55,163 bases of DNA. Origin: Octopus sinensis (Eukaryota). The notes beneath the pieces were generated by a model. The model did no database searches, was not told the origin of the DNA, and worked only from the letters and a program-made list of their open reading frames with translations. The stretch lies in contig NW_021833777.1 of the NCBI RefSeq assembly GCF_006345805.1, positions 1 through 55,163 on the forward strand, written 5' to 3'. Every line of letters begins with the position of its first letter. The first letter of the stretch is position 1. A program made the position numbers and the translations under genes. Of the stretch, positions 1,226-55,025 are shown piece after piece.

Positions 1226-1942
1226 GCAATCCTGCAAGGTAATTCGCTTGCAATCCGCGGTGCGGCCAATGGCTAATCTTAATTTATGTTAACTTTTTTT
1301 CTTCAATTGACACAATTGACCTGCTACTTTGATTCAAAAATCACGGTTTGTCATGGAACAAGTCAGTAATTAACACTCGTGTGTGATGAACTAGTCAAAG
1401 TTTTGGAGGAACACAAAGAATAAAATTATATAGACGTGGTTGAGGGTCCAGCTTCATTAATCGCACCCGAATTGATGAAATGCCCGAATCTTGTGCAAAA
1501 CAGAAATTTATTCTTTGTAGAAAACTCAATGTGTTCCCACTGCATGAGTTAGAAAAAGACCGTCAACCTCAGTGCCACTAGATGTGAAAAAATGTTTTAT
1601 TAAAGAGATCAAAGCACTTTCGAATAAGGAGTTGCAAGCCTATTTTTTTGACAAGATAAGAAATCGCAATTTTTTGATTGAAATGGGATAAAGAAAAATT
1701 TACTGCAAGTCGAGATTGAAAAAATGTGAAAATAAGACTTTTTGTCCTAAGGGGAAGGATACTAACCGTGAGATAAAGAAAACATTCTAATCTTATAGAA
1801 GTTTCTATTAATTTACAATACCAATTGTCTTTGCTGTATAGTTTTCTCAATTCGAGAATGTATTGCTTTTCTCAAATGATTCGTATTTCATAGCGGATTT
1901 GGATAGAATTCTTTTGTATTCTCCCTTTATGACTATTCATAC

Positions 1943-1974
1943 CAGTTGTTCCCAACCTGGGTTCCGGGGACCCC
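1943..1974 (+). mobile_element. Solo Buster-type hAT terminal inverted repeat
   Basis: CAGTTGTTCCCAACCTGGGTTCCGGGGACCCC resembles the TIR at 43335 (CAGTGGTTCTCACCTGGGGTCCGCG); no partner end found. Confidence 0.45.
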
Positions 1975-2663
1975 TGCTATGTTCTGGTGTCGAAAAATAT
2001 TTAATTTTATTTATGCGAGTCAGGGTTTTCACTTTAGCCAAAACAAAATGTAGAAATAAACTTAATGCTTCACATGATATAAAGATACATTTGTCAACAA
2101 TAACTCCTAACATTGCACAACTATGCTAAGATAACAGATTACCTTAATGTTCACATTAAAAAGGTCTTTCAGTTGCTTTTAAGTTTTTTGGACTTAATAA
2201 GCCTCTCATACGCACACTGATCCCTCTATAAGGAGAAGGTTGTGCTTATTTAAACAAATCTATTAATTACTTCAAAGGTATAATTAACGGTTACATAAAA
2301 ATAACTGTTTAGGTAATTTAAAGATTAAATCTGATTAAATCAAAAAATTTAAGTTCCAAGCAAAGTGTATATAATGAAGATTTGGAGGTCTATGTTGATC
2401 AGCACACACAAACCCACCCACTGTTTCTGCCTTCGAATAGCTAGTTATGACTGTTATTTGTTCCTGACTTTCACCTATGATAATAACTTGGGGGTCATTA
2501 AAAAGAAAAGTGTTGAGAAATACAAACAAACAAATCTTCTATGTCAATTGCTGATGATGTTTGAATATTTTCTAGTTTGAAATATATAAATTAACAATTA
2601 AATTTAAAATATAAACAAAATAATTTATTGTTTCCCAAATTCGCTTCTGGTTTATTGTGTTTG

Positions 2664-3361
2664 ATGGCTGATAAAAACTACACTTTAAAACACACAAAAA
2701 GTCTATCTGAATACGCAAAATATTTAAGCAAAAAAAACACAAAAAAGTCAGAGAAAACAACAGCGGAACCCCTAAAGCAAAGAGATTTGAAGGTAATGAA
2801 CATGACTGACCCTAACAGCCTGATTTGGACTCAAAATTAGGGCAAATCCGTATGGTGACAGCCTCGGCACCCACCTCTTCCCAACCAGGGTACTAAAAGT
2901 GAAACACGCAGATATTTTTGCGAGGTTTGTGACTGCCTGATAAAGGACTCGACCAACTACCTCGACCATATCAACGGAAAAAAGCGTATTCCTCAAATGT
3001 GACCTCTGCAGACCAGAAGAACCTGGGAATGTCGATGAAGGTGGAAAAGTCGAGCGTCTCCCAAGTGCGTGAGCGAATCGAGGCCAATCGGATGTCGAGG
3101 CATGTCCCCGAGTACGACATCCATGAACGACTGGCAGTATTGTTAGAGGAGAAGGAGAAGAGGAAGGAAAATAGGAAGGAGAGGAGGAAGGAGATGAAGG
3201 ACAAGAAGAAGAGAGCAGTGGAAGTTGATGCAGATGGGGCGTATATTGCTTCTGTTCTCGGCTTCTCCTCCTTTGGTAAACGCACGGTCAATGCCCCCGA
3301 TGAAATTGAGGAACCAGATGTCGCCAAAATCATGGGATTTTCTGGTTTCGGTAAGCAGTGA
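2664..3361 (+). CDS. ZMAT2: Zinc finger matrin-type protein 2 (Snu23, U4/U6.U5 tri-snRNP component), 4 exons
   Basis: Removing GT-AG introns 2793-2818 (26 nt), 2890-2911 (22 nt) and 2986-3011 (26 nt) gives one open frame: ...[22 protein letters not shown]...[49 protein letters not shown]...MGFSGFGKQ*. The start ATG at 2664 is the best guess. Confidence 0.92.
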
Positions 3362-3441
3362 CAGTCAACCAACGTTGTCCTTACTTTAGTAACGTGTTAA
3401 TTACCAACTGAGTATTAACCAATTATTATGATCGCATAGGC

Positions 3442-3704
3442 CAGTGGTGATTTTTGGTCGATTTCATTTTGCGATTTTTGATCGATCGACTTGTTTATTT
3501 TAATAACAAAATTTTTATCTTATAATTAAAAGTTGATGGGATTTTTGGAATTGTAATTCTCTGGCTCATATGAGCTTAGTGCTATTCTCATGCAATCGGC
3601 AAGATGGTTATCCGTTTAAACGGGTCCTGTATTGAGATTTGATCAAATAAAAAATCTAATTACCAATTTACATATCGAGGCGATCGACTGGTTGTTCACT
3701 CCTG
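3442..3704. mobile_element. hAT (Buster-type) MITE
   Basis: Ends CAGTGGTGA...TTCACTCCTG, flanked by 8-bp GCATAGGC/GCATAGGA (7/8 match, TA at positions 4-5 as in Buster TSDs); no coding capacity. Confidence 0.65.
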
Positions 3705-3713
3705 GCATAGGAT

Positions 3714-4345
3714 TGTTGTTGTTGTGCATAACCCCGGTCTCACATTAGGGTATGAGACCGGCGGCTAGCAGAAACAACAGCGCCTTCGCGGTTGCTCCCA
3801 AAGGACCTCGGGGGAGTGGACAGCAAAATTTCCTGCGGACAGGGAGGAGAACAGGGCAGCGGAAAAGGTGGTCAGTTGAGTGATCTTCGGCACAGCAGAG
3901 GTTGCATACCGGGGAGATCACGGCGTTCAATGAGTGAGCGTAGGAGTTTAGTGAGTGGTGGTGGCCCGAGCGGAAACGAGCAAGTTGATCTGAGCGGAAC
4001 GCTCCAGAAGCATTTCGGAGGGGTGAACTTCTGGAGGAAGTTTGTTGAGGACAGAGTTAGGCTTCAGCCTTAGAATGGACGACGTTGAAATGAAGTCGTG
4101 GATTTTTTCATTGGCTGTGAACATTGGTTTAGGCCATTGATTTTGGCAAGTACCGGGAGTATTGTTTGGCAGGCGTGTTCTTCAATGCACGGCCGTTGTC
4201 ATTTAGCGTGTTTAGGGCAGTGCAAAGGGTGGTAGAATTTTCGCGAAGCGAATAGGAATTCTGCTCCTCTCATGTTTAGATGTTCCTCTATCGGAGGAGG
4301 TGTTGGTTTCACAGTGCAGATGGTCGATGGGTGTTGATTCAGGCA
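3714..4345 (-). mobile_element. 5'-truncated APE-type LINE (I/ingi-like C-terminus with CCHC knuckle)
   Basis: ...RFRSGHHHSLNSYAHSLNAVISPVCNLCCAEDHSTDHLFRCP; 3' tail aacaaacaacaa; exact 13-bp TSD CCTGGCATAGGAT at 3701-3713 and 4346-4358. Confidence 0.8.
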
Positions 4346-4439
4346 CCTGGCATAGGATAATTCAGTACTAAATGCTTTTGTATTATATTTGACGTATTCA
4401 ATTCCTTTTGATATTACTTTAGTGTTAGTTTGATTAATT

Positions 4440-6370
4440 TCAAATCATGGTTGGAATCATAGAACCACTGTCCACGTCGTATAGACGTTCGATTAGACTG
4501 CGTAGGATTTGGACGTTCAAAGTTCGGTTCAGAGCAAATTTCTTCTTTCCCAATGAAAGTCCTCTGTAGTTGATCAAATTCATTATTTGGTTTACCACGA
4601 AAGTTGTATTTATGATCGAAAATGTTATTTTATTTGTAGGAAAAAATTAGATGCTGGCTGTTTATTTACTCCTCCAATGAATCAATTACCATTAAAACCA
4701 ATTACATTAACCAAGGCTGTATATTTTGGAAATACCGGGGCACTCACCTGCCATGGCTATCAGTCACTACCTTTTGTTCAAAACCCATAGCTTCTCCCAT
4801 CCCAATATAACATTGGCAACAGAAAACCCTTAAATTCTAATTACCGCAAAGAACTTGAACTGTTATAAAATCCCGTAAACCTTCAAATTTCAATCCATGG
4901 CGGAATATCCCACGAATAGTCGGGAAGCGTGGACCATCCTTATAATTATGAGAAGGTAATTCAACCTATCAAATACATTTTTTTCACAAATTACGTCAAC
5001 TTCCTCTTTGACATCACAGTCATCTTAAACGCAACGTTGCCATACTCATATTACGGCATGCGTAAACCTAATATCACAAGTTAATAATTTATATCACAGT
5101 CCAGAGCTGCTAGGCGAGGTTTAAAATATTAATAAATTTTATAAAAATTACATTTCTGAAGTTCTTTTGTTGTTCTCTTGAGTAAATATCTAAAATTATT
5201 AATTTTGTATTAAGAGATCGTGCTTTTTCGCAAAACAACATAGCATCAAAATCATTAATTGAACGTAGCGTTTTATGATTTTATTTAAATTTCCACGGAA
5301 AATGATGTAGAGAAAGGGGACCTCCTACCTTCCCTTGATCACATTACCAATGAAAAAATCTTCATTATGTAAAACCCTTCCGAAAACAAATGATGTGGGG
5401 TGAGCGACGGTAGGAGGCTGACAAATAGGAACTGGGTATACCAATATTCTCCACCTCTCTTTGAATCCGGAAGGCTGTATTAAAGATTTGGAGGCTTATG
5501 CTGATCGACACAGACAGTTCCTTCTTTCCTTAGCTTCTTCATTCGATTAGTTAGCTGTGACTGTTTGTGCTGGGTTTGCTATGCAAGCTTGGGGGTTAAT
5601 AAAAAAATAAAATAATGATCAACCAGACTATTTTAGTGATAAATTTATTAAAAATGTTAATTAAAATTTTAATTTGCCATTATTAGAAGTAATTGTCTTG
5701 CAATCCATGAAGCGGCATTAAAATAGAACATGATTTTGTATTAACTTTCCATTCTAAATTAATTTGCTGATAAAAAAACTAAAATTGCACTCCAATATCA
5801 GAAGACTTGCTGAAAGTAAACCCATGTTTTGATGCATGTTTTTCAAAATCAAAAAATAAGAGAATCAAAATTATGATAACCTCTTTACCCGGGTTATACG
5901 TACAGTGTTTTTCTGTTTCTTCATCAATAGTGATCATTTCCTCCTCAGGTTGTTACTTTATATCTTTGTGTTGAAACTTGGTCGTATAGGAGCCCTGACG
6001 TCTCGCAGCTCTGGACTGTGACAATTTATAATAAAAATATAAATAATAAACCAAATTGGGTCAAAATCCAGTTATATTACTCACCCCTGTCTCTATATTT
6101 AGTAGTTCTTAAAGCTTGTGTAACTCATATTAAAATAGGATATGCAAAGTTATAGGCAGGATATACTAAAAATGGAGGAATATGATTATACTTGTATTCA
6201 AGTCTGTACGTACATGGGATCATTCTTGAAACGATAAGAAGTCTCTCATACAGCCATTTAATGTTTCATGTTAATTTGGGCTTGCACCAATGAAACTAGC
6301 CCCATCAAGGGTGCCAAAATGGTCGGAAGTATGACTCAAAATATCAAAATCAACTCCAATAACTTCCAAC
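4440..6370 (-). pseudogene. EPRS: Cytosolic glutamyl-tRNA synthetase (GluRS/EPRS catalytic region) pseudogene, interrupted by a transposon
   Basis: Colinear motifs ELEVIGVDFDILSHTSDHF, DPMY, YNFAYPI..VTQALRTTKYRDR, YEYG..FKMTVMSKRKLT*FV, DGPRFPTIRGIFRHGLKFEGLRDFITVQ, GWEKLWVLNK; multiple stops, deletions and short introns. Confidence 0.85.
5092..6023. mobile_element. Non-autonomous Ginger/TDD-like TIR element (932 bp)
   Basis: TIRs TATCACAGTCCAGAGCTGC / GCAGCTCTGGACTGTGACA; 5-bp TSD ATTTA at 5087-5091 and 6024-6028; inserted in an intron of the GluRS pseudogene. Confidence 0.8.
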
Positions 6371-6379
6371 TCTTTTAAA

Positions 6380-6960
6380 ATCACTGATTTATAAATAAAT
6401 GTTTTTTACTTTTAAAAAAAGAGTCTTTTTAAAAAATATTATTTCAACAAATTGTAATTATCATCAATTTTTTGATGGAAAACTTTCAAAAATAATTGAA
6501 TTTCATCACGAATGCACAAGTTTTCTTCGCCATTAAGGATTTTTAATGAGTTCATGTGTTTTTTTAATTGGTTGAACAACCATTCGATATGCTTTAAAGC
6601 TTTGACAATTTTATTTAACTGAAATTTTCATATCAACGATGTAAAAAAAGTAAAATTACTAATTTTTTAGATAAGATGACCAGAAACCTGAATATTTTTG
6701 AGCTGTAATTGTTTAAAAAATGTCGAAAACTTTACTATCAAATGTTTTAAAAATATCGTAAGTTGTTGTTTCAGACTGAAACTTTTGGAATAATGTTTCC
6801 ACAGGTAAATTTTGTTCTAAATCGAAGTTTTAATTCAAAAGCAATTATTTATTCCAGGCAGAGATCCTACAAAGCGTTTCTAAAACTGAGATATTTCAGC
6901 CTAAAGACTGTTCCAAATCAAAATTGGACTGCACTATTTTATTAGGAAAGGGTATTTGTT
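6380..6960 (-). mobile_element. pogo/Tigger-like transposase N-terminal remnant
   Basis: Nucleotide similarity to 54560-54960 (ttttaaaaatatcgt.agtt.ttgtttcag.c.gaaa.tttggaataatgtt.ccacagg), which encodes the CENP-B HTH region; frameshifted. Confidence 0.7.
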
Positions 6961-7823
6961 CACCTTTGATTTTTTTAAATGATTGTACTGATCACAGAAT
7001 CGTTGATGTATATATTGAATATAAAAATAGAATAGTTAAACAAAATGTTAAATAGTAAGTATTAATCATGAAAAATGGAAGAATATGAATCTTCTATTAT
7101 TTTTTCTAGCTTTAATCAGCATTAATAAATTCCACAGAACTTAATTACACAAAAAAGAGATATAAAAAGAAATCAAACAACCACTCATATCGAATTTCAC
7201 TGGAATTAATATTTTCGACTACTCGTCTAATCAGATCATTCAAGCAAGTATTGGGTTTCCTCTATACAATCATTTTTATTACAAATTAACAAAAACCGTA
7301 ATGTTTCAATTCTTTAAAATTAGACAACTTAGAAATTCCATGACTAGAGAAATTGCTAGGATGAGTAGTTTTCAGTTTATGTTCAAAATAAACAACGAAA
7401 TGACAGTATATGCCTATGGGATACAATTGAGACAAAAATCTAACAAACAACCAATTCGGCTTTTCAATGTTGTCTAGTCTCAAATACAGTCAACTTCGGG
7501 AACACAAATATTAGGAAGCTGACAATCTGTGATATTCGGAGGCAGAATTTTATATGTTTTTAAAACTAAAAACTCTGTGTATAGTACTACACCAACCTTG
7601 ACTGCATTAAAATGAATACTTCTTGAATTTTTTTACCAATTTTGTGATTATATGATTTGAGATAAGCAGGACTCAAATATGTGAGATAATTCCGATTTAC
7701 ATCCAAATACTTCCACCCACCTGTCTGACACATTTCAAGACCATATGCAAACAGGCTAACGTTATAAATACATTTCCTATACTTTAATTCGTATCTTAAA
7801 ACTCGACGTCGACGATGCTCATT

Positions 7824-22911: not shown

Positions 22912-24548
22912 TTTTTTTTTTTTTTTTTATATTGTAACTATAATAAATTTACAAAACATGAAAAGGTTAGAATTATGTTTATGGGGGATATGTAGCCTGG
23001 CGGATTGCCAAACTGTTTCCCCGGATAATGGCAATCGAGAGCCGTTGCATTAGCCAGTTCGCCTCCCGAGGATCATGGGTGCGCATTGAGATTTTGGCTC
23101 CGAGCTTGCGCGAAGAACTTTTCAGTTTTTGGACCGAGAACACCCGACGTCTCCGCCGCGATCGGCACCACGGAAAACTTCTCCGAGAGGGCAGAATATT
23201 TTAAAAGCTTTAAATCTTCAGCCTTCTTAGCTGCAGATTTGGCCTCCAGGGCACACGAAGTTAAGTGAGAAGCAGAAAAGGTGTCGCAGCAGGTTGCGTC
23301 CCAAACGAGGCCTTTTCCGCCTTCGAAGGGAAAAAGGGTCATCCCGTCAGGACGTTTTCCGTCGCCGCGGTCAAGACCCGGTGGCTCGAGGACCGAAGGA
23401 AATCCCGCCGAGTCGAGGGCCCTCCGTATGATGTCGTTCATAGCAGAGTGCCTCGGAAAACGTCCGGCACTCCTCTTGCACGATAAAGGGTGCAGACCGA
23501 AAGGGTCAACAGTGCAGCCACAGCGGCACGTGTGCGGGACACATTGCCTTAGTCCGAGTCGCAGAGAGACTCCGATCCTTACCGCTTCATCGTCAAGGAG
23601 AGTGCCAGATGGGGCATTCGGGAATGCACAAAGCCAAGCTCCGCTAGCCGGGGATGCTGCCGACAGAAGGCAAGCGCGGCGGTGCTGGTTGGACGACTCG
23701 AGCAGCAGATTGAAAGATTGCTTGCATCTAATTCGATCCCAGGCTCGTTGAGACATTCGATCTTCCGGAAAGTCAAGGCCTTGTTCTCTCCAGACTTCGC
23801 TGAAATGAGCAACATTTGTGTCCAAGGAAAATTCAGAAAAGGAGCGTAGAATTTCCATGACAAGTGTGTGGCTCGCGGAGACGGAAGAGAGGTAAGCAGG
23901 TAACGGTAGGTCGGAACATGAGCGGATGCCGAGCCCTCCAAAAGATAACGGGAGGGTTGCCTGTCTCCAACCCATGTCGTCGAAAGGGGAATTGCATACG
24001 TTCTGAGTGCAAGTGCGGATAAGGAGGTCAATGGCTGAAAGCCTCTCTGGAAAATCAAAGCACGTTGAAGAGCGAAGCAAATAGGAGAGCTTTTGGATCG
24101 AGAAGCAATTCCGTAGGAGGAATAATGCAGTGTGCGAGTCCAGCTGTCTGATACGATCAAAAGCTTCTTCGAGAAAAAGTTCTTTTTTGCGTAGGGCCAC
24201 ATCGATAGAGTTGCCAGCGACCGGGGCTCCGAGAATAAAAAGTTCGTCAATGGGAGTAGATTGAACTCTTGGAATAAGATCGCAGAAAGAGGAAACAGCG
24301 TCTTCGAAAATAGATTCCGAGCATCCAAGGTTGGTAATTTCACATTTGGAGGAATTTAAAATGAGGCCGATTTTCTCCAGAGCCGGGATGATTTTAATTA
24401 TGTCCTGCAAGACGATGTCCGGAGGGCCACCGAGAGTGGCGTCGTCGAGATACCAGAGGTTCAATGGAGAAGATAGAAGTTTGGTCACCTTTAATAGTGG
24501 AGAACCCTGAGGGACCCCATTTGGTAATAGTCTCGATATATAAATCAT
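22912..24548 (-). mobile_element. CRE-clade non-LTR retrotransposon with a 491-aa open RT-to-RLE ORF and poly(A) tail
   Basis: WYLDDATLGG, LPLSFGGLGI, CxC/HPLSC..RH zinc knuckle, KRPDG..LVWDATC RLE; T18 tract at about 22912-22929 is the poly(A) tail on the minus strand. Confidence 0.92.
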
Positions 24549-28670: not shown

Positions 28671-29420
28671 TCTGTTGATTATAAACCTTGGAATTTAACG
28701 GAAAACAAAAATTGTTTAAAATAATGAGTAATTTTTTAATTTTAAATTACGTATAAATTTTTTTTCTAAATTATAAAAATCTTTCAGAAAATCCAGCAAC
28801 ATATTTAAAACGTTTTTCTCAACTTTGTTCATGTCATTAATGGCTGTTCTTATAGTTACTTGTTTTCAATTGAAAAAAAATCATTTGATTGATTGATTGT
28901 TCATGGTCAAGAAAAATCAAAATCTCTCATCAGTTAAAGCTTGCTCCAAAGTTCAAAAACGAACAGCGGTAAAGCCACAGCCTTTTTGCGAACCCATCAA
29001 AGCTGAAGATCCCCCAGAACCTCCGAAGTCTACTGTGCCTCAAAAACACAGTGAGACCCAATCCCATCAGACGAAAACTGAGCCTAACACCTCAAGCCTC
29101 ACATATACTCTGAGTATCGAAAACCCGGCACTTGGAAAGATCAAGAGGATCAAGACCTCCTATCCAAGTCGCCAACTGCTTCCAAAGCCCGGATAACTTT
29201 GCAGAAATCCGGCACGTTCATCCTAAAATTCCGATCCCCCGAGGATGCTGTTGCTTTCAAAGCAGAGCTCTCTCAATCGAATATGTTTGGCGAAGGCGGC
29301 CATAAACTTGCCTCAGTAGCTGAGAAGGCCTCAGTCTTGGTCCTTAAAGGAATCCCTCATTGGATCTCGACAGAGGACCTTAACCTCCACTTGAGAGAAA
29401 GTCTACACCTTTTTGGTATC

Positions 29421-29760
29421 GAATATCCGAACTAGGATGTCAAATATCCGAACTGAGATGTCAGACGTCATTATTGTGGTTTCTAATATCCGAACTGAGA
29501 TGTCAAAGGTCATTACTGTGGTTTCTAATATCCGAACTGAGATGTCAAAGGTCATTACTGCGGTTTCTAATATCCGAACTGAGATGTCAAAGGTCATTAC
29601 TGCGGTTTCTAATATCCGAACCGAGATGTCAAACGTCATTATTGTGTTTTCTAATATCCGAACCGAGATGTCAAACGTCATTATTGTGTTTTCTAATATC
29701 CGAACCGAGATGTCAAACGTCATTATTGTGTTTTCTAATATCCGAACTGTGATGTCAAAT
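29421..29760 (+). repeat. Left arm: tandem 42-bp units (9 core copies)
   Basis: Unit AATATCCGAACTGAGATGTCAAAGGTCATTACTGTGGTTTCT; 7 full units plus a 21-bp starter and a partial unit. Confidence 0.95.
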
Positions 29761-30232
29761 GTCCGTTCCTATATTTTCTGCACAATAGTGAAAAAATGAT
29801 ATTTTTTAATGAAATCAATGTTAAGTTGCTAAATATTGTCATCGGGGATTAAATCGTTCATCTCGATAATACTTGGAAAATGTTTCTGCACATGATTGCA
29901 TGTGATGACAGGATTTTCCTCAACATAGTTTATCATTCTCGATATTTCATTGTCTGTAATTTTTGACCATCTGAATCCTCCACGTTTTTTATTAGGTTGT
30001 GAAGCATTTCGTATCCATTTATAAGCTGTATTTCGCTTAACTCCATTCGATTCCGCCACAATATGCCAATCTGCATCTTCATTTTCATAAGCAGATATAA
30101 TTCTCATTTTGGCTTCCAAATTTGTTTTATTATATGTTTTACTAACACGAGAAGAAGTATTCATAGTTTTAGCAAAAGTATTCATTTCGAACGAACAAAA
30201 ATCCATTTATATTTTTTTAGATACGTAATTTT

Positions 30233-30847
30233 GACCTTTGACATCTCAGTTCGGATATTAGAAACCACAGTAATGACCTTTGACATCTCAGTTCGGATAT
30301 TAGAAACCACAGTAATGACCTTTGACATCTTAGTTCGGATATTAGAAACCACAGTAATGACCTTTGACATCTTAGTTCGGATATTAGAAACCACAGTAAT
30401 GACCTTTAACATCTCAGTTCGGATAATAGAAACCACAGTAATGACCTTTGACATCTTAGTTCGGATATTAGAAACCACAGTAATGACCTTTAACATCTCA
30501 GTTCGGATAATAGAAACCACAGTAATGACCTTGACATCTCAGTTCGGATATTAGAAACCACAGTAATGACCTTTGACATCTCAGTTCGGATATTAGAAAC
30601 CACAGTAATGACCTTTGACATCTTAATTCGGATATTAGAAACCACAGTAATGACCTTTGACATCTTAGTTCGGATATTAGAAACCACAGTAATGACCTTT
30701 AACATCTCAGTTCGGATAATAGAAACCACAGTAATGACCTTTGACATCTCAGTTCGGATATTAGAAACCACAGTAATGACCTTTGACATCTCAGTTCGGA
30801 TATTAGAAACCACAGTAATGACGTTTGATATCTCAGTTCGGATATTT
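30233..30847 (-). repeat. Right arm: tandem 42-bp units (15 core copies), inverted relative to the left arm
   Basis: Reverse complement of the same unit; one copy near 30530 has a 1-bp deletion. Confidence 0.95.
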
Positions 30848-31823
30848 GATACCAAAAAGGTGTAGAATCGGACTTCAAGTTCGAAAGATTCTCTCGCAAA
30901 GGAACCGATATGCCTGTCGGCAGACTCACGCTGGATTCCAGAGCCGAGGCCAACACCCTCATCCGCTTTGGAATAACTGCGGGCTTCAGCCATATCCGCT
31001 GCGAATGGCACAAGCCCTCAGCAACGAGATGCTTCCGTTGCAATCAGTTTGGACATACGTCCTACAGATGCTCCGAAAAACTCCGTTGTCTCCTCTGCGG
31101 TAAAGAACACAGGCACAAAAACTGCCCGAGTTCCAAGCCGAAACCAGGTGTCCCAGCTGCAAAAACCTGCATTAACTGCAAGAACACTGGGCACTTGGCG
31201 TGCTACGGTGGATGTCCGTCTGCCAAAGCAGCAACAGCAGCCTCAAGGGTTGCGAAGAGCCCACAGACTAAAAGCCCAGTACGCTGGGTAAAAGCCGAAC
31301 CGATAGAATCAGTCTGGACAAAAGGGTCTCCCCCAAGTCCGTCCAAAGTCGATGTCTCTATTCAGACGTCGCCGGCCCCCAGCACACTCACAAGCGCGGA
31401 GTCAAACACTAATGAGTGCCATAACTCAGAAGTAGTCCGCTCGGCTGTCCCTCATAAGAGGAGAAAAACCCACCGTGACAAAGCTTTGTCACAAAGAAGA
31501 GCCCACTCGGATCAGGACCTACACAACAGAGATTCCCAACTGGAAGTCTTCCGCTGGTGTATAGGAGCCCTGACCAAACTAGGAGTGGATATGAATATGC
31601 TGCAAGAGCTCCTGCTAGAAGGGAGCAATTCAGCAACATAGCCACTATTAACTCTGGCTCACGACAGATGAATTGGACGCAAGCTCAGAAGAGTTCAGTT
31701 GCCTTGGCATCAGTCTCGTCCTATCACCGTCCTTAATTCCTGTCACTTTCTCTTTCTCGGTTAATTACAATAAACTTGATTGATTGATTGTCTTTATATT
31801 AATTGGCCTTTTAAAGTTATTAC

Positions 31824-33324
31824 TAGGGCAACATAAGTCAATAAAGTCAACTTCAATCCAGAGTTAGACTTAAGTCTAAAAATAATGATTAAATTAAAAT
31901 AAAGTCAAAAAAAAATTTATATAAAAAGTTTTTTAGGTCAATTTGGTCAACTTTTTAGATTTACAGGTCAATTTTTTTAATTAGGTCAATTTTTAAATAA
32001 AAATTTAAATAATATTATTTAAAGCATCAAAATAAATTTAAAATAGTCGCAGTGACATTTGTCTCTTATTGTAACAAATTTTAAACTAAATTATAGTGTA
32101 CTTATGCCTAAAAATAAACCTTCGGATTTTAAAAAAGCTAAAAATATTTGTGAAAAATATCCTAAAGAGTTTACAATTACACCAAATGGAATGCTTTTTT
32201 GTAAATTATGTGAGTTACATGTGACATGCAAGAAACAATTTTTTGTGAACAAACACAGGGAAACACAGAAACACTCTTCCCGAACAAATAATATATCCAC
32301 AAATAAAAAACAATTGAATATTGTTCCTCCAAATTATGTCTTCAGAAATTTTGCAACAGACGTAACAGAAGCATTTGTATCCGCAAACATTCCGTTCTAT
32401 AAATTGAGAAATCGAGCAATTATCAACTTATTTGGAAGTATCGGGCATTTCTGCAGGAAATACTCTCAAGCTATTATATTCCACTCTATACCATATCACA
32501 TGTTTTGCTCATTTAGTGCATAATTGTGCACTTAAAATAAAAGTATATTATCCCGAAGTTGATAAATTGATTGCTTGTATCAAAGCACTTGTTGTAAAGA
32601 ACAATTATCGAAGACAATTGTTTAAGGAAATTGGGTACCCACCAGAACCAATAGTTACGAGATGGGGAAGCTGGCTTAAAGCTGTTTCTTACTATGCTAC
32701 AAACCTGCCAAATGTTATTCAAGTATGCACTTCCTTAGAAGGAAATTCTTTGCTCATTAAAAGAGCGAAAGAATGTTTATTTAATGAACATCTTCATGAA
32801 GATCTAACGACGATAATATCACAATATTCACCTTTATTACATTTGCTTGATGATTTAGAATCGACCAATTTTACTATAAAAAAGCATTCAAGTATTTGAA
32901 AACATTGGATTTTAAAGAAGACGTGTGTGGAATAAAAAATTATATTACCAAAAGGATGAATTCCAATGATATCACAAAAATTATGAATTTCGATGATCAT
33001 TCCATTTCACCTTTAGATTATTCTTTGTTGATTGAATGTCAGGCAACATCGTGCGCAGTAGAACGATCATTTTCGGTTCTTAACAAAATCTTAACCAAGG
33101 ATAGGAATTTTAAAGTGGATAATGTACAATATTACTTAATTGTAAATAACTCGATAAACGATGAATAAAATTACTTTAAATTTTCATAAACGTAGTTTAT
33201 ATATGAAAATAAAGTAGTATTTTTACGGTCAATTATTTGGTCAATTTTTAAAATTTTAAGGTCAATTACATTGACTTTTTAAGGGCAATTTTTATTTTTT
33301 TAAGTCAATAAAAATGTTGCTCTA
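31824..33324 (+). mobile_element. hAT (Ac-like, CGGBP1-type transposase) element, internally deleted
   Basis: TIRs TAGGGCAACAT / ATGTTGCTCTA; exact 8-bp TSD GTTATTAC; subterminal (g/a)gtcaa repeats; LFCKLC..KH zinc finger, HITCFAHLVHN, VTRWGSW, CAVERSFS; catalytic mid-region deleted near 32445. Confidence 0.92.
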
Positions 33325-37050: not shown

Positions 37051-37358
37051 AATCATCTTTTTCAATAATCTGGTTATTATTGAATCCTTGCTCTCTCTAA
37101 AGGTGAGAATTACTGACATTCAAAACTGTTTTGTAATAAAAATAAAGTTTTTTTCATTAATTATTATTAATTATCTTAATTTTAAAATGGTAAACCTAAT
37201 ACCTAATAAATTAAGCCACGTGTGAGCACGCTGTCGATTTACTTTGTGGTGCTCTCTTAATTATTTGCTACGCATTATTTTTTTATCTTAATTGGATTCA
37301 GAAGGAATAATACAGATGTATTTTCTTTTAATGATTTAATTATTTGAAAGTTCATCAT

Positions 37359-37850
37359 TTTTGTGATATTTTTCGATTTTATTCCTTTAATCTCCTTTTT
37401 TTGACTTATTTATACTTTTTGTGATATTTTTCGATTTTATTCCTTTAATCTCCTTTTTTTACTTATTTATACTTTTTGTGATATTTTTCGAGTTTGTTTC
37501 TTTAATTTACTTTTTTACTTATTTCTATTTATATTTTTTGTGATATTTTTCGATTTTGTTCCTTTAATCTCCTTTTTTTACTTATTTATACTTTTTGTGA
37601 TATTTTTCGAGTTTGTTTCTTTAATTTACTTTTTTACTTATTTCTGTTTATATTTTTTGTGATATTTTTCGAGTTTGTTTCTTTAATTTACTTTTTTACT
37701 TATTTCTGTTTATATTTTTTGTGATATTTTTCGAGTTTGTTTCTTTAATTTACTTTTTTACTTATTTCTGTTTATATTTTTTGTGATATTTTTCGATTTT
37801 GTTCTTTTAATCTCCTTTTTTACTTATTTATACTTTTGTGATATTTGAAT
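37359..37850. repeat. AT-rich minisatellite with two unit types (about 58 and 62-64 bp), 8 units
   Basis: Each unit starts ttttgtgatatttttcga; order A A B A B B B A. Confidence 0.9.
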
Positions 37851-39841: not shown

Positions 39842-39889
39842 TTTTTTTTTTTTTAAAAGAAAATGAGAGAACAAGAATCCGAACTAATT

Positions 39890-40260
39890 AAGAAGAACAT
39901 TGTCTCCAGAAAACCCTTTCCATTGAAGATCCAACAGGGAATGTGCACAAGTCTGAGTCGTCGCCGTTCGTTATGTTCGGAAAGGGGAGTAGAACCGACT
40001 CCGTTACAACAGACATATGCATAGATCTGAAGGAAATCCTTAGATTAGGTGATTCTGGTGGCCAACGCAACACACGCGTGTAATTAAGAAGATCATTGTC
40101 TCCAGAAAACCTTTCCATTGAAGATCCAACAGGGAATGTGCACAAGTCTGAGTCGTCGCCGTTAAGTTCGGAAAGGGGAGTAGAACCGACTCCGTTACAA
40201 CAGACATATGCATACATCTGAAGGAAATCCTTAGATTAGGTGATTCTGGTGGCCAACGCA
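39890..40260. repeat. Tandem duplication, about 175-180 bp copies with 196-bp period
   Basis: Near-identical copies at about 39890-40068 and 40086-40260; one minus-strand frame reads WPPESPNL, resembling Tc1 WP.qSPDLNPIE. Confidence 0.85.
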
Positions 40261-40324
40261 TCACAGTAATAGAAACCAACGGGCGCAGCTTTATCCAAGA
40301 TATTTTACTTTACCAGTAGTCAAT

Positions 40325-43334: not shown

Positions 43335-46300
43335 CAGTGGTTCTCACCTGGGGTCCGCGAGATTTTTCTGAAACTTTATTTAAATGTTTCTATTTAAGAT
43401 AACAATTTTAAATTAATATATAATAGAATAAATCATAATTAATAATATCTCTTTTAGATATATTATAAATTAATATATATTAATATTCAATAAACTGAGG
43501 GGGCTAAATAAATTAATATATTTTAATTTCAATAATACTGAGGAGGCTAATTACGTTAAAACTGAATGTAACTTAATTATTTATAAAAATTTATTTTTTA
43601 GTAAAAGTTAATAAAATTTTTAAGCACGCTATTCATATGAATTCCTCGAATGTTATTAAGATACGCAAATATAATCCTGATTATATAAAATATGGGTTTA
43701 TTTGTATTGATAAAGATGGATTTGAAAGCCCAAAATGTGTTGTGTGCATGAAAATTTTGTCACACAATAGCATGAAACAACAACTCTTGTGAGACACTTG
43801 CGCACATGTCATCCCCATCTAATCCACAAAAAAATAAGGATTATTTTATTTCTTTGCGTAAAACGATGAAAAATCAAGTATTGACTCGTTTAATACAAAC
43901 TTTGCCTTCTGATAATTCCATGCTATTAGCATCTTACATGATTTCATTACGTATAGCGAAAGAAAAGAAACCTCATAATATTGCGAAAAACTGATTCTTC
44001 CTTGTTGTAGACATAGTACGTACTCTTATTGCCACTCATGCTGAAATATGATTTCGGAAATACCATTATCGATGTTCATCGACGAATTTCTGAAATGTCA
44101 GAAAATATTAAGTGTAGGTTATTGATATTATTATTATTTATTTTAACAGGTGGTAGAACAAATAAAAACTTCATGCCATCAAAATTTCGCTATACAAGTT
44201 GATGAATCCACCGATGTAGCGAACTGTGCTTAATTAATAATATTTGCTCGTTATGTTTATGACGGAGATTTTAAAGATGAATTTTTATTTTCCTATTCGC
44301 TTGAATCGACCACTAAAGGAGAAGATATTTTTCAAGCAATTTCTATGTTTTTTGACAGTGTTGGGTTATCTTGGAATAATGATGTTGTTGCACAACCGAT
44401 GGAGCTCCAGCAATGCTTGGCTTTCATTCTGGCTTAGAGGCCAAGTTAGACTTGCTAACCAGGAAACGAAAATATGCATTGTATGCTACATCGATATGCA
44501 CTTGCTGCAAAAACATTACCTTCAGATTTAAGATATGTTCTCGATGATGTCGTACATATCATAAATTACAGTGCACGACAAAAGTAACCGGACAAGCCGA
44601 AATTTCCATTATTTTAGCCAATTTTAATGCTTTTTTAAAAAAATAGCTTCTTATTAATTAAAATATTCATTAAATAATATATTTACTTTTTTAATTTCTT
44701 TTTTTTGAATAATCCATTAAATTTAAAGCACACTTATTAAATGTAGGTGACAAAAGTAACCGGACACTTTTCAGTTTTTCGCCAAAATTACATTTTTTTA
44801 ACCTTTTTTAGGGGTAAACACATGTCAGATTTTGTTAAAGGACAAATAATTGCCTTTAAAAATCAAGGAATGTCTATCAGACGCATTAGCACTCTTACTT
44901 GTACCAAAAAATCGACGATCCACGATTTTTTGAAAAAATACAAGAAAAATATGATAATTTCACGACTTCCAGTTTCTGGGAGAGCTTAGAATACTTTCTA
45001 AGATTGAAAACTGATGAGCTAACTGCTCATAGTGTAGAAAATCCATATGAAAGTTCAACGTTTTACGTTCCTTTGTACATGAAAAGTTTGGAAAAGACAT
45101 TTCCAAAAGGACAATAATGCTTTATTGAATGAAAATAATTATTTTGGGAGATTAACCATGAAAAGACCCTTTCTCTCCAAAAAAATGTTAAGGATAGATA
45201 AAACATATCTAAAAATTTTTTAATGATTTCGGACGCAGAATGGAAGAGAACAATTTCCTCAGACGAATCAATTTTTCAATTATCTATGAATAAAAAATCT
45301 CGAATAGTTTACCGAAAGAAAGGGGAATCCTTAAAGTAGTTGATTTGATATTTATTTAGATATATCTTGCCAACTGTAAAACATGGAAATGTAAAACAAT
45401 GGTTGGGGATGTATCTCATACAACGGAGTGGGGATGGGAATTAGTTTTTTTGATGGTACGTTAAACAGTGGACGATATGTGAATTTGTTGACGAATAACC
45501 TGATGGAATCTGCAGCAAAATGAATTTAACGGATTTCACATTACAACAGGACAATGCTCCCTGCCACAAAGCAAAAATTGTGACGGAATATTTCAACGAA
45601 AATCAAATCAAAGTTCTTTCATGGCCCGCCCAGTCACCTGATCTCAATCCCATTGAGCACGTCTGGGCATATATGAAAAGAAAAATAGATGAAAAAGCCC
45701 AGCATGTCACAATGACCTAAAAGAGGAAATTATCCAAATTTGGAGATCAATCCCGATAGAGTTCATACAAAAAATAATTTTATCAATGAAGGATAGAAGC
45801 TACGCAGTGTATAATGCCAAAGGAGGCAATTCTAGATACTAATTTTGATTATTTTTAACTGTCCGGTTTCTTTTGTCGCACCTCGTAATTATTTATGCTT
45901 AAATTTAATGTACAATTGAAAAAAAGATTAAATTAAAAATGAAAAAATTGTTTTTCGTGTAAATTAATGTACAAAGAGTGATTTATCTGAAAAAAAGTTA
46001 AAATGACTTAAAATAATGGAAATTTTGGCTTGTCCGGTTACTTTTGTCGTGCACTGTATATTAAAAAGAGTGCTTTAAATTCGCGCATTTTCAGACTTAT
46101 TTGCGAAGAATTTGAAAAGGATGGAAAGGCTTTGTTATTCCACACTGAGGTGAGATGGCTATCTCGGGGAAACATTCTTGCCAGAGTTTTTTCTTTGAGG
46201 AATGAATTATCTGAATATTTATTCGCGAAAACAATTCCAAATCATCGGAATTTATTTCGAAATTAATGGATAGTTCATGGCTATCTAAACTTGCTTACTT

Positions 46301-52804: not shown

Positions 52805-55025
52805 TTATATAACTCTTTTAGTTTTTTTTAAAGCGATAAAAGCCTCGTTAATAGTAACAACTTTCTGACTTTGTTCACACGATTCTTCGCTAATTTCTTG
52901 TTCTATTTTTTCTGAATTATTTAATTCAAGTTCTTCACTTTCGTTATACAGTCCGACCTTGAATTGGAACACTAAGTGTTCCAAAAACTGAGGTTTTGTC
53001 AAAAAATTAATATCAATATAAATTTAATAATTTAATTAATGCAAAAGTCTTAAATATTATTATTTATTGAAAAATAGTCATCGATCCTTTTTCATAACCA
53101 TAATTTTTTTTCAAACTACTGAACAAATTTTGTCTGAAACAGTAAAAATCATTTAACAAAATTGGAGCTATGTCTAGAACTGATTTTTCCAATTCATTCA
53201 CTTTTGCTACTACTTCTTTGACCGTAGTCTGTTTATTTTGCATACCACTGTAAAAAATTTCTTCATTATCGCTGCTTTCCGTATTTTCCAACACTTCGTC
53301 TACAACTTGTTCTATAACATCATCCGTCAGATTATCAGAAACAACAAATATTTCATTGCCGAAAGTATTATCCCAACAATTTGTAATTATTTCGGAGGAT
53401 ACATTTTGCCACGATTTCGATACTATTATCAATGATTGGCGTAAATTAATTTTTTTAAGTAAGTCGCAGTAAAATCTTCTTCATCTATACCAGCGGTTCT
53501 CAAATGCGGCCCCCGGGGCCGCATGTGGCCCTTAGGATTTTTTTTGCGGCCCCTCTAGAGTAACTAACTTTTTTAATTTTTAATAATGTTTAAATTTAAT
53601 TATTCATTCTTAAGGTTAAACATATCCATAATTGGTGATTTCATTAATCAATTTGAAGCACGTTTTGGGGTACATTTATATAAATTTAATTTTTAGAATT
53701 TTAAAGAATTCCTTCCTTTAATGAAAACATTCGCAACTCCATTCAGCGTGGAAATTAAGGATGCGCCCGCAAAGTTTCAACTAGAACTCATTAATTTACA
53801 ACATGATATAGAACTGGCGGCATTGTTCAAAAATGCGTCCATTATTAATTTTTACGAATTAATTCCACAAGACAAATTCAAAAATATAACACACAATGCA
53901 TATATAAATCTACATATTTATGCGAATCAATATTTAGTAAAATGGAAAATATAAAAATATATAAAATATTTTTGTGCGGCCGCGAAGCTAATCTTAATTA
54001 TCGATTTGGCCCTTGAGCTAAAAAGGTTGAGAACCCCTGATCTATACAACAAATAAATTCAATTAACGCCTTTGAATAATTATCTTTAAAAGCTTTGATT
54101 ATCCCATTATCCAATGGTTGAAGAATTGGAGTTGTATTTTTGGGTAAAAACAGCAATTCGATATTTGAGAGCGATTTATTTTCATGACACGAAGCGTTAT
54201 CAAGAATTATTAAAATTTTTCTCTTTTCCATTTTCATTCGTTCATTCACTAAGAATAACCATTGAATAAAAATATCTCTTGTCATCCAGGCATTTTTGGA
54301 AAATGAGTGCATAGCACCATAATCATCAGGGTTAAAATTCTGAAACATCTGGGATTTTTCCCGATTATTAAAGGATCAAATTTTTGGCCTGAATAACTGC
54401 AGCAAAAGAGCAAAGAAATTTTTCCTCATTTATTTTAGACCCTGACGCTTTTTTATTTTTTTGTACGAATGATTTTTTGGGGTCTTTTTTTATAAAAAGA
54501 CAAGTTTCATCAATGTTAAAGATATTATTTTTTCCAAATTGATCAATTTTTTCATGGAAAACTTTTAAAAATGATTGAATTCCATCACGATTACATGAGT
54601 TTTTTTCGCCGCTAAGGATTTTGAATTTGAGTTCATGTCTTTTTTTAAAATTCATTAACCAACCATTCGATGCTTTAAAGCTTGTAATGTTCAATTTACG
54701 CGCAATTTTCAAACCTTAAAACAATGTGAGAAAAAGTAAAATTACCAATTTTTTTGATAAGAGGACCTGAAACTGGAATATTTTGGAGCCGTAATTGTTG
54801 AAAAACGTCGAGAACTTTACTATCCAATGTTTTAAAAATATCGTCAGTTTTTGTTTCAGTCCGAAAATTTGGAATAATGTTCCCACAGGTTATTTGCGGC
54901 GTAATCGTTTTTTTTATTCGAGCAATTGTGCCAATGCTCGTTTCATATTTTTGAGTAAGTACTCTGTGTGAATGACTTTTTGGTTGTCGAGCAATTTCAA
55001 CCTTTTTCTCGTAACTGAGACCCAT
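52805..55025 (-). mobile_element. pogo/Tigger-like transposase (CENP-B HTH plus DDE_1), decayed
   Basis: PVSGPLIK, FKASNGWL..FKKRH, IFNIDET, SKNAWMTRDIF, LILDNASCH, LPKNTTPILQPLDNGII, ITNCW; 31-nt intron 54715-54745. Confidence 0.9.
53491..54039 (+). mobile_element. Buster-type hAT deletion derivative (549 bp) inserted in the pogo transposase
   Basis: TIRs CAGCGGTTCTCAA / TTGAGAACCCCTG; exact 8-bp TSD ATCTATAC; internal FATPFSV..FQLELINLQ remnant; host frame reads FICCIDEEDF after removal. Confidence 0.9.

What the first reader, a model, noticed from the sequence alone, without database searches (positions are those of the whole stretch)
29406..30862. Foldback-type transposon derived from IS630/Tc1, with expandable 42-bp TIR modules
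A TA-flanked element whose two arms are inverted arrays of one 42-bp unit, with unequal copy number (9 vs 15 cores). The unit contains the same ATATCCGAACT-AGATGTCAAA core as the outermost TIR, so the arms look like amplified transposase-binding sites. The ~470-bp loop keeps only the DNA-binding HTH part of the transposase. Modular foldback architecture is best known from FB/Galileo-type elements; a Tc1/IS630 version that may encode a DNA-binding-only protein (possible repressor) is unusual. It could form a hairpin or dsRNA of more than 300 bp.
Basis: partly seen in the sequence, partly recalled or inferred. Interest (0 to 1): 0.75.

Follow-up and report, generated by a model that had tools for sequence, protein, structure and literature searches.

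The report
Tc1/IS630 transposon with 21-bp-array ends
This is a real, recently inserted, non-autonomous cut-and-paste transposon of the Tc1/IS630 superfamily whose two ends are inverted arrays of a repeated module; related elements in a crab and in marine metagenomes show that such array ends are the normal design of a whole, apparently undescribed, clade.

Summary
Window 29406-30862 is a 1457-bp element flanked by a TA duplication, with perfect 15-bp termini (CACCTTTTTGGTATC). Its two arms are inverted arrays of a 42-bp unit, with 9 cores on the left and 15 on the right. Removing it and one TA restores an uninterrupted gag-like ORF, so it transposed.

[quoted passage not shown] It is an in-frame deletion: about 102 N-terminal residues are fused to the native C-terminal tail and stop, and the whole catalytic core is missing.

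The new result is that the array arms are neither a one-off nor a degenerate foldback state. Five further lineages of the same transposase clade also carry end arrays with a 21-bp period: a Portunus crab element with a near-complete transposase gene, and four environmental lineages with full-length or near-full-length transposase ORFs. Where both ends are visible the arrays are inverted. Four lineages share the TA|CACCTTT terminus. The 42-bp unit here is a 2 x 21 dimer.

Arm-specific blocks of identical variants show the arrays expand locally. That each unit binds transposase, and that the truncated protein acts as a repressor, are inferences. I found no published description. Verdict: new variant of a known kind, moderate interest.

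The parts
29404..29405 (.). Left copy of the TA target-site duplication
   Evidence: Joining the flanks with a single TA restores a continuous ORF.
29406..29422 (+). Left terminal sequence CACCTTTTTGGTATCGA. The first 15 bp are a perfect inverted repeat of the right end. It is the presumed cleavage end.
   Evidence: The leading CACCTTT is shared with the termini of the Portunus (L004), L011 and L012 elements.
29423..29759 (+). Left arm (3' arm relative to the transposase ORF): 9 cores. There is one 21-bp half unit, then seven 42-bp units (variant order F A E E C C C), then a final core.
29764..29828 (-). Short unique segment between the ORF stop codon and the left arm (3' untranslated remnant)
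   Evidence: No similarity to transposase in any frame.
29829..30206 (-). 125-aa ORF, an in-frame deletion derivative of the transposase. Residues ~18-102 are HTH1, the KKRGG linker and the first helix of HTH2. Residues 104-119 (NHVQKHFPSIIEMNDL) are the family's C-terminal motif, followed by the native stop. The DDE core is absent.
   Evidence: phmmer found 181 hits at E<=1e-3, the best at 4e-18. Those hits are DDE_3 proteins. The family HMM gives 94 bits. The tail scores z=9.6 against family C-termini and z=-0.8 against the HTH2 continuation. AlphaFold2 mean pLDDT is 82, and 96 over residues 31-70.
29895..29903 (-). Approximate internal deletion junction (codons 102-104). About 240 codons of the ancestral transposase are missing.
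   Evidence: inferred from alignments to full-length relatives.
30237..30845 (-). Right arm (5' arm relative to the ORF): 15 cores, read from the terminus inward as fourteen units (thirteen of 42 bp and one of 41 bp) plus a final innermost core. Variant order is G A A D B H A I D B D B B A, which includes an 84-bp D-B higher-order repeat three times.
30846..30862 (-). Right terminal sequence (reverse complement CACCTTTTTGGTATCAA)
30863..30864 (.). Right copy of the TA target-site duplication
29199..29405 (+). 5' part of the interrupted host ORF (gag/ORF1-like gene of a retroelement)
30865..31641 (+). 3' part of the interrupted host ORF, with three CCHC-type zinc knuckles (for example CFRCNQFGHTSYRC)
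   Evidence: There is no Pfam hit at E<0.01, so the gag/ORF1 label rests on inspection of the knuckles.

Best explanation
The feature is a non-autonomous, internally deleted copy of a cut-and-paste DNA transposon. It belongs to a distinct clade of the IS630/Tc1/mariner superfamily with a DD33-36E transposase.

In this clade each terminal inverted repeat is built as TA | ~13-17-bp terminal sequence starting CACCTTT | a tandem array of 21-bp-period units. Here the period is 42 bp, a 2 x 21 dimer.

The copy inserted at a TA inside the gag-like ORF of a retroelement and duplicated the TA (shown). It must be mobilised in trans by a full-length partner of about 2.2 kb that is not in this window (inferred).

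Each unit most likely carries one binding site for the PAI-like first HTH of the transposase. The arms would then load many transposase molecules in phase, since 21 bp is two helical turns, while cleavage occurs only at the unique terminal sequence (inferred by analogy with Sleeping Beauty IR/DR ends and the Galileo multi-site TIRs).

Unit number drifts by local tandem duplication and deletion, through slippage or unequal exchange, independently in each arm (shown by the variant pattern).

The retained 125-aa ORF is an in-frame fusion of the DNA-binding N-terminus to the native C-terminal tail. If expressed, it could occupy the units without catalysis and so compete with or repress the transposase (speculative).
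For: Transposition:
- TA on both sides, perfect 15-bp termini, and the empty site restores a continuous ORF.

Superfamily:
- The loop ORF hits 181 proteins at E<=1e-3.
- The full-length hits are DDE_3 proteins of 350-400 aa with DETN / DNAPCHS / NPIE motifs and 33-36 residues between the second D and the E.
- They match NCBIfam IS630 over nearly the whole profile. P0026 scores 134.6 bits and P0025 109.7 bits, against a cutoff of 100.
- The family profile's best PDB match is the Sleeping Beauty catalytic domain at 3e-13, ahead of Mos1.

Clade architecture:
- Portunus element, L004 1724-7458: TA|CACCTTTTCACCC at both ends, 18 versus 9 inverted 21-bp units, and transposase aa 5-363 inside it.
- L009: an intact 370-aa transposase between inverted 21-bp arrays.
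- L011: TA|CACCTTTCTGC, then 8.5 x 21 bp, with the inverse array at the other end.
- L013-16 and L017: 21-bp units at the contig ends.
- L012: TA|CACCTTTCAC terminus.
- The nearest relatives by identity, P0002 and P0004 at 45%, are both array bearers.

21-bp sub-period here:
- The two halves of the unit share 12 of 21 positions (P about 0.009).
- The two outermost left cores are 21 bp apart.
- TRF also reports period 21.

Expansion:
- Only the consensus variant A occurs in both arms.
- Left-only runs are EE and CCC. The right arm alone has the D-B dimer, three times.

ORF anatomy.

Precedents:
- The SB PAI subdomain dominates base-specific binding, and all four DRs are needed (PMC7827188).
- The Galileo THAP domain binds repeats within its long TIRs (PMC3688188).
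Against: - No second copy of this exact family, and no autonomous partner, could be examined. The host genome is not in the searchable collections and the window has only this copy.
- Binding of the units by the HTH is not shown.
- Unit sequences are not conserved between lineages. Only period and position are.
- Some clade members show no arrays in the DNA available: L003, Paragonimus L008, and Aphanomyces L005, which has only 22 bp x 2.
- Most environmental contigs break inside the arrays, so full arms and termini are seen for only a few.
- The fold search gave no significant hit (best E 0.17), although the top matches are paired-type domains.
- Expression of the ORF is unknown.
Confidence: 0.85

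Rival explanations
1. One-off local slippage. An ordinary short-TIR Tc1/IS630 MITE-like copy happened to amplify a subterminal motif at this locus after insertion, so the arrays have no family-level meaning.
For: Runs of identical adjacent units (EE, CCC, D-B x3) show recent local duplication. Only one copy is available in the window.
Against: Five other lineages of the same transposase clade have 21-bp-period end arrays, including elements with intact transposase ORFs. The arrays are inverted wherever both ends are visible. The outermost units of the two arms (F and G) share the ACGTCATTA variant, which suggests positional homology that predates the arm-specific expansions.
Confidence: 0.05
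2. A classical Foldback element (FB / Mutator-related, or Galileo / P-related) that merely contains a captured fragment of a Tc1-like gene in its loop.
For: Long internally repetitive inverted arms with unequal unit numbers and a short loop are the hallmark of FB, Galileo and Tetris (PMC4079207, PMC3688188).
Against: The TSD is TA. FB/Tetris-type elements have 8-10 bp, and Galileo/P has 7 bp by general knowledge (Tetris TSDs). The same TA|CACCTTT termini and arrays flank complete Tc1/IS630-type transposase genes in relatives, in the same position and orientation. The ORF keeps the native start region, the native C-terminal tail and the native stop, as expected for an internal deletion rather than a capture.
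Confidence: 0.03
3. The arrays are passenger satellite DNA that colonised the subterminal regions of this clade, tolerated but not bound by transposase. Only the terminal ~17-40 bp matter for transposition.
For: Unit sequences differ completely between lineages and copy number is very variable (5 to 18). TE-borne arrays that seed satellites are known, for example Tetris TIR-220 and miDNA4. Some clade members lack arrays.
Against: The period is 21 bp (or 42) in all six lineages even though the sequences are unrelated. The array always begins directly after the 13-17-bp terminus, and the outermost unit sits where Tc1/mariner transposases bind. Together these argue for a constraint imposed by the protein.
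Confidence: 0.2
4. Assembly artefact: the arrays, or their lengths, were produced by mis-assembly of a repeat.
For: Tandem repeats are error-prone. Short-read contigs of relatives break inside the arrays. The Portunus scaffold has N gaps.
Against: The units carry an ordered, non-periodic pattern of variants, including a 41-bp unit. Both junctions with unique flanks and with the loop are clean. The flanks rejoin into an ORF. Independent assemblies show the same architecture.
Confidence: 0.04

Closest known systems
IR/DR-type Tc1 elements (Sleeping Beauty; by general knowledge also Bari3, Paris, Minos, S and Tc3)
   Same: TA target duplication, and a bipartite paired-like HTH plus DD34E-type catalytic domain in the autonomous form. 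Each TIR carries more than one direct repeat of the transposase-binding site, with the outermost next to the cleavage end (PMC7827188). The family profile's best PDB match is the SB catalytic domain.
   Different: IR/DR elements have 2-3 binding sites per ~200-250-bp TIR, separated by unique spacer. This clade has 5-18 head-to-tail units with a strict 21-bp period, and unit numbers that differ between arms and lineages. A classical IR/DR Tc1 remnant lies in the same window at 44562-46063 for comparison.
Galileo (P superfamily) and other Foldback-like elements (FB, Tetris)
   Same: Long, internally repetitive TIRs with variable unit number. For Galileo, the transposase DNA-binding domain was shown to bind repeats inside the TIR (PMC3688188). 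The foldback state is thought to arise independently in several superfamilies (PMC4079207).
   Different: The superfamily and target duplication differ: THAP domain and 7-bp TSD for Galileo, 8-10-bp TSD with a proposed Mutator affiliation for Tetris, versus HTH/DDE_3 and TA here. Units there are longer (for example ~220 bp in Tetris). Here the autonomous forms already have the arrays.
Tc7 of C. elegans (foldback-like non-autonomous derivative of Tc1; from memory, not checked here)
   Same: A Tc1-lineage element made mostly of two long inverted arms whose outer ends match the autonomous element, mobilised in trans.
   Different: As I recall it, the Tc7 arms are unique sequence, not tandem arrays, and it has no coding remnant.
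KP-type deletion derivatives of the P element (from memory) and N-terminal fragments of Tc1/mariner transposases
   Same: An internal deletion leaves an ORF that encodes the DNA-binding N-terminus without the catalytic domain. Such proteins can repress by occupying binding sites.
   Different: Repression is demonstrated for KP and untested here. The second HTH here lacks its recognition helix.
Named ITm lineages outside core Tc1: Gambol (DD34E), Hiker (DD35E), Dici
   Same: IS630-like DDE_3 transposases with 34-35-residue spacing and TA duplication (PMC13469147).
   Different: Dici has 8- or 33-bp TIRs starting CAGTCGGT and three CDSs. The TIR structures of Hiker and Gambol could not be read, and no reference sequences were available, so the relationship is open.

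Membership tests
IS630/Tc1/mariner (ITm) superfamily | TA target-site duplication | tested here: met
   TA at 29404-5 and 30863-4. A single TA restores the host ORF. The same holds in Portunus L004, and a TA precedes the terminus in L011 and L012.
IS630/Tc1/mariner (ITm) superfamily | Terminal inverted repeats | tested here: met
   15 of 15 bp at the termini, with arms up to 319 nt at 93% complementarity.
IS630/Tc1/mariner (ITm) superfamily | Transposase with an N-terminal bipartite HTH domain homologous to family members | tested here: met
   phmmer E 4e-18 to P0001 and 181 hits in all. The family HMM gives 94 bits. Pfam HTH models fall below their curated cutoffs for the window ORF itself. 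The second HTH is truncated.
IS630/Tc1/mariner (ITm) superfamily | DDE/D catalytic domain (RNase H-like) in the element | tested here: not met
   This copy lacks it through an in-frame deletion, so it is non-autonomous. Homologous full-length proteins have DDE_3 with a DD33-36E triad, pass the NCBIfam IS630 cutoff, and match the SB catalytic domain.
Foldback elements in the strict sense (Drosophila FB / Mutator-related; Tetris) | 8-10-bp target-site duplication | tested here: not met
   The TSD is the dinucleotide TA. Tetris TSDs are 8-10 bp (PMC4079207).
Foldback elements in the strict sense (Drosophila FB / Mutator-related; Tetris) | Long TIRs made of tandem repeats with variable copy number | tested here: met
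   The element works like, or looks like, a foldback but is not a member of that lineage.
Galileo / P superfamily | THAP-domain transposase and 7-bp TSD | tested here: not met
   The DNA-binding domain is of HTH type and related to DDE_3 transposases. The TSD is TA.
IR/DR subgroup of Tc1 (Sleeping Beauty-like) | TIRs of ~200-250 bp with two (sometimes three) spaced direct repeats as binding sites | tested here: not met
   The arms are 354 and 626 bp, with 9 and 15 contiguous cores and no unique spacer. The definition is from PMC7827188.
MITE (Stowaway-like) | Small size (a few hundred bp) and no coding capacity | tested here: not met
   The element is 1457 bp with an intact 125-aa transposase-derived ORF.
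Hiker (DD35E) / Gambol (DD34E) families of ITm | Phylogenetic placement of the transposase within the named clade | not testable with these tools
   No reference sequences were available. The Hiker paper is not held and no supplements are held for the Dici paper.

The most novel reading that the evidence does not exclude
This clade of Tc1/IS630 transposons uses phased 21-bp tandem arrays as an obligatory multi-copy loading platform for its transposase. The transpososome would be a filament-like higher-order complex rather than a dimer or tetramer. Array length would tune transposition frequency, and in-frame deletion products such as this 125-aa protein would act as KP-like, array-binding repressors. 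Under this reading the foldback architecture is an evolved functional design within the best-studied transposon superfamily, with autonomous members available for direct biochemical tests.
Probability: 0.25. Interest if true: 0.7.

Novelty: new variant of a known kind. Interest (0 to 1): 0.55.

Why it matters
Foldback-like ends (long, internally repetitive, unequal TIRs) have been tied mainly to the Mutator and P superfamilies. Their function is unclear because autonomous, tractable members are rare.

Here the same architecture appears in the IS630/Tc1 superfamily, the best understood mechanistically. It has a strict 21-bp period, a conserved cleavage terminus, and relatives that still encode intact transposases.

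That makes several questions directly testable:
- whether internal repeats are binding sites;
- whether array length modulates activity;
- how cleavage is confined to the outermost unit.

It also has practical consequences. Such elements break short-read assemblies, since the relatives' contigs end inside the arrays. They can seed satellites and provide long inverted repeats for hairpins, ectopic recombination or small-RNA production. Standard TIR finders that expect short or unique TIRs will probably miss or misclassify them.

Tried and rejected
1. Other copies or a partner in the window. The terminus (up to 2 mismatches) and the core (up to 3 mismatches) occur only in this element. tblastn with nine full-length relatives finds only the loop ORF plus two unrelated DDE fragments. 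These are a classical Tc1 remnant at 45.5 kb and a pogo-like remnant at 54.2 kb, neither with CACCTTT ends.

2. Public DNA collections with the core motif. There were no hits in viral or prokaryotic genome contigs. The two metagenome hits are single chance matches inside unrelated coding DNA.

3. Exact-protein look-ups of the loop ORF and of the RT ORF found nothing on record, so the host genome is not indexed.

4. A word-indexed homolog search with the 125-aa ORF found nothing. Only the exhaustive HMMER search found the family.

5. Pfam on the window ORF gave only sub-threshold HTH hits. NCBIfam on it gave only weak unrelated HTH hits.

6. The fold search of the AlphaFold2 model against PDB gave no hit at E<=0.001. 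The top-ranked hits were Pax paired domains, CENP-B and Mos1/SETMAR DNA-binding domains, which is suggestive only.

7. Host identification. The RT ORF's best named hits are Octopus sinensis at ~50% identity, then barnacle, Lepidoptera and crab. This shows only that the host is an invertebrate animal, possibly a mollusc.

8. Literature. Seven full-text searches found no Tc1/IS630 family described with tandem-array TIRs. The Hiker paper and the relevant supplements were not available. Repbase and Dfam could not be searched.

9. Relatives without arrays: L003, Paragonimus L008 and Aphanomyces L005. The trait is therefore not universal among the HMMER hits.

10. The idea that the ORF ends in random out-of-frame sequence was rejected. 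The tail is the native C-terminus.
Full report
**1. The observation**

Window 29406-30862 is a 1457-bp element. It begins with CACCTTTTTGGTATC and ends with the exact reverse complement. That 15-mer occurs nowhere else in the window, even allowing two mismatches. A TA dinucleotide flanks each end.

The 22-bp core ATATCCGAACTGAGATGTCAAA occurs 24 times with up to three mismatches. Nine copies are on the + strand (29423-29759) and fifteen on the - strand (30237-30845). Shuffled sequence gives zero. TRF reports a 42-bp period, 95% matches, and 7.6 and 14.9 copies. Inverted arms reach 319 nt at 93% complementarity. As single-stranded DNA the element folds into one long interrupted stem, with the extra right-arm units looped out (MFE -362 kcal/mol).

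Two details should be added. The two outermost left cores are 21 bp apart, because a half unit is missing. One right-arm unit is 41 bp.

**2. It is an insertion made by transposition**

Deleting the element and one TA joins the flanks into one uninterrupted reading frame...LNLHLRESL|ESDFKFERF... It continues through three CCHC zinc knuckles to a stop at 31641. This is a gag/ORF1-like gene of a retroelement. That label rests on inspection, since Pfam gave no hit.

A clean TA duplication inside a still-open ORF indicates a recent event of the Tc1/mariner type. The window as a whole is TE-rich eukaryotic DNA. Its RT fragment at 23073-24548 is closest to Octopus sinensis proteins at ~50% identity. 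The host is therefore an invertebrate animal, and nothing more precise can be said.

**3. What the loop encodes**

The minus-strand ORF 29829-30206 (125 aa) gave only sub-threshold HTH hits in Pfam and nothing in the word-indexed search. The exhaustive HMMER search found 181 homologs at E<=1e-3, the best at 4e-18.

The full-length homologs are 350-400 aa. They carry DDE_3 with DETN / DNAPCHS / NPIE motifs and 33-36 residues between the second D and the E. They match the NCBIfam IS630 model almost end to end, two of them above its curated cutoff. As a profile they hit the Sleeping Beauty catalytic domain (3e-13) ahead of Mos1. Named members come from the crab Portunus trituberculatus, the oomycete Aphanomyces astaci and Paragonimus flukes ('Tc1-like transposase DDE domain'). 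The rest come from marine and other metagenomes and from Logan assemblies.

[quoted passage not shown] The remaining residues do not continue HTH2. The tail NHVQKHFPSIIEMNDL matches the conserved extreme C-terminus of the family. Its summed local score is 292 against 159 +/- 14 for shuffles (z=9.6, 0 of 2000 shuffles reach it). Against the HTH2 continuation it scores z=-0.8.

The ORF is therefore an in-frame internal deletion of about 240 codons, with the junction near 29895-29903. It keeps the native start region, the native C-terminal tail and the native stop, and it removes the entire catalytic core and the HTH2 recognition helix. That explains why the ORF is intact.

AlphaFold2 with a 38-sequence family alignment gives mean pLDDT 82, and 96 across HTH1. 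Foldseek found no significant PDB match (best E 0.17). Pax paired domains, CENP-B and Mos1/SETMAR DNA-binding domains rank at the top, which is consistent but weak.

**4. The array ends are a clade trait**

This is the main new result. I fetched genomic context for relatives.

(a) Portunus (L004). An element at 1724-7458 is bounded by TA|CACCTTTTCACCC... and ...GGGTGAAAAGGTG|TA. Its left arm has 18 units of ~21 bp and its right arm has 9, in inverted orientation, followed by a shared unique inner segment. Transposase residues 5-363 lie inside in three frames. The scaffold has two N gaps.

(b) L009, with L006, L007 and L010 (Tara Oceans and another metagenome). An intact 370-aa transposase lies between inverted 21-bp arrays of at least 5.6 and at least 8.2 units. 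Both arrays are cut by the contig ends, and there is a symmetric inner boundary.

(c) L011 (Tara). TA|CACCTTTCTGCTC is followed at once by 8.5 x 21 bp. The inverse array of at least 7.6 units sits at the other end, with HTH and DDE_3 ORFs between.

(d) L013-L016 (Logan, four samples). A RING-finger/transposase fusion has inverse 21-bp units at both contig ends, and the contigs break at different points in the arrays.

(e) L017. A 21-bp x 3.2 array at the contig start lies upstream of an intact 366-aa transposase.

(f) L012. It has a TA|CACCTTTCAC terminus but no long array.

Counting the window, six lineages whose transposases differ by more than 50% have end arrays with the same 21-bp period but unrelated unit sequences. 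Four share the TA|CACCTTT terminus. The window ORF's two closest relatives (45% identity: P0002 on L011 and P0004 on L004) are both array bearers.

Arrays were not seen around P0001 (L003) or Paragonimus P0079 (L008). Only a 22-bp doublet was seen in Aphanomyces (L005). The trait is therefore not universal among all HMMER hits.

**5. The 42-bp unit is a dimer of 21**

Its two halves share 12 of 21 positions (binomial P about 0.009 at p=0.3). TRF independently reports a 21-bp period over the left arm. The left arm has lost exactly one 21-bp half at its outer end.

**6. The arrays are dynamic**

Among the 21 full units, only the consensus variant A is present in both arms. Read from the terminus inward, the left arm is F A E E C C C and the right arm is G A A D B H A I D B D B B A. 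Left-specific variants sit in adjacent runs. The right arm carries an 84-bp D-B higher-order repeat three times. The outermost units of the two arms (F and G) share an ACGTCATTA variant, which suggests they are positional homologs and that growth occurs internally.

This supports 'expandable modules' through slippage or unequal exchange acting independently in each arm. It cannot be told whether this happened at this locus or in ancestral copies. In both elements with complete arms, the arm upstream of the transposase start is about twice as long (15 versus 9 here, 18 versus 9 in Portunus). With n=2 this is only noted.

**7. Mechanism**

Shown:
- TA-targeted cut-and-paste insertion.
- Derivation from an IS630/Tc1-type transposase gene by in-frame deletion.
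- Array TIRs as the clade's design.
- Local unit turnover.

Inferred:
- Each unit holds a binding site for the PAI-like HTH1. In Sleeping Beauty the PAI subdomain provides the dominant base-specific contacts with a core present in all direct repeats. The third helix of RED, which is deleted here, contributes only at the outer sites that are cleaved (PMC7827188).
- For Galileo, the transposase DNA-binding domain binds repeats inside the long TIRs, and a higher-order synaptic complex was proposed (PMC3688188).
- A period of two helical turns would place all sites on one face of the DNA.

Speculative:
- The 125-aa protein binds units without catalysing anything and so competes with the transposase.
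- Read-through from the surrounding retroelement yields a hairpin RNA of more than 300 bp.

**8. Comparison and novelty**

Membership of the ITm superfamily is met on TSD, TIRs and homology of the DNA-binding domain. The DDE domain is absent from this copy but present in its homologs.

The element is not a member of FB/Mutator-type or Galileo/P-type foldbacks, because the TSD and the protein are wrong, although it resembles them in architecture. It differs from IR/DR Tc1 elements in having many contiguous, phased units rather than two or three spaced sites. A degenerate IR/DR Tc1 lies in the same window at 44562-46063 as a contrast.

Seven full-text searches found no description of Tc1/IS630 elements with tandem-array TIRs. 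Reviews list Tetris and Galileo for TIR arrays, and miDNA4 for a central satellite in a Tc1/mariner MITE. I could not search Repbase or Dfam, and I could not test placement relative to Gambol or Hiker. I therefore rate it a new variant of a known kind rather than categorically new.

**9. Verdict**

It should be reframed in three ways. The foldback-like arms are the native TIRs of a clade that still has autonomous members. The basic period is 21 bp. The ORF is a KP-like in-frame deletion product, not a clean DNA-binding domain.

Interest is moderate (0.55). The finding would not overturn anything, but it offers a tractable system for the long-open question of what internally repetitive TIRs do.

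Noticed in passing
window 44562-46063: A degenerate classical Tc1 element of the IR/DR type. It has ~200-bp TIRs beginning ACAGTGCACGACAAAAGTAACCGGACA, with a second GACAAAAGTAACCGGACA copy about 185 bp inward. The DDE fragment 'QQDNAPCHKAK...SPDLNPIEHVW' is interrupted by stops. It is a different family from the finding.
   Followed up: partly
window ~54049-54387 (- strand): A pogo/Tigger-like DDE_1 transposase fragment (ILDNASCHENK...LQPLDNGIIKAFK), close to the window end.
   Followed up: no
window 32059-33168 (+ strand): Three overlapping or adjacent ORF pieces that look like a frameshifted hAT-type transposase (zinc-finger-like N-terminus, C-terminal 'CQATSCAVERSFSVLNKIL' dimerisation-type motif). 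They lie just downstream of the interrupted gag-like ORF. Two pieces gave no Pfam hit at E<0.01.
   Followed up: no
window 23073-24548 (- strand): A 491-aa ORF that is the C-terminal part of a retroelement reverse transcriptase (YLDD motif). Its best named relatives are uncharacterized Octopus sinensis proteins at ~50% identity, which is the only clue to the host lineage.
   Followed up: partly
window 37358-37846 and 39885-40265: Two further tandem arrays: a 62/119-bp unit repeated ~8/4 times, and a 191-bp unit repeated twice. They are unrelated in sequence to the 42-bp unit.
   Followed up: no
L008 6001-7119 (Paragonimus skrjabini miyazakii contig JTDE01002010.1): A 372-aa member of the same transposase family is kept within one 90%-identity cluster across four Paragonimus species. 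No arrays or obvious TIRs lie within 6 kb. It may be a domesticated transposase or a recent horizontal arrival.
   Followed up: partly
L013-L016 751-1950 (Logan ERR139485xx contigs): An intact 399-aa protein in which a RING finger (zf-RING_2) is fused to the N-terminus of this HTH + DDE_3 transposase, flanked by 21-bp end units. This is an unusual domain addition for a Tc1/IS630 transposase.
   Followed up: partly
L004 4156-4491 (Portunus element): An internal 18-bp x 19 tandem array (AACCTCACAGTGTTTATC) lies immediately upstream of, and partly annotated as, the start of the transposase-like gene. It is distinct from the 21-bp arm units.
   Followed up: no
P0043 (from the HMMER search): A 5191-aa predicted protein with 15 separate stretches matching the HTH region. 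It may be an artefactual gene model across many tandem or nested copies.
   Followed up: no
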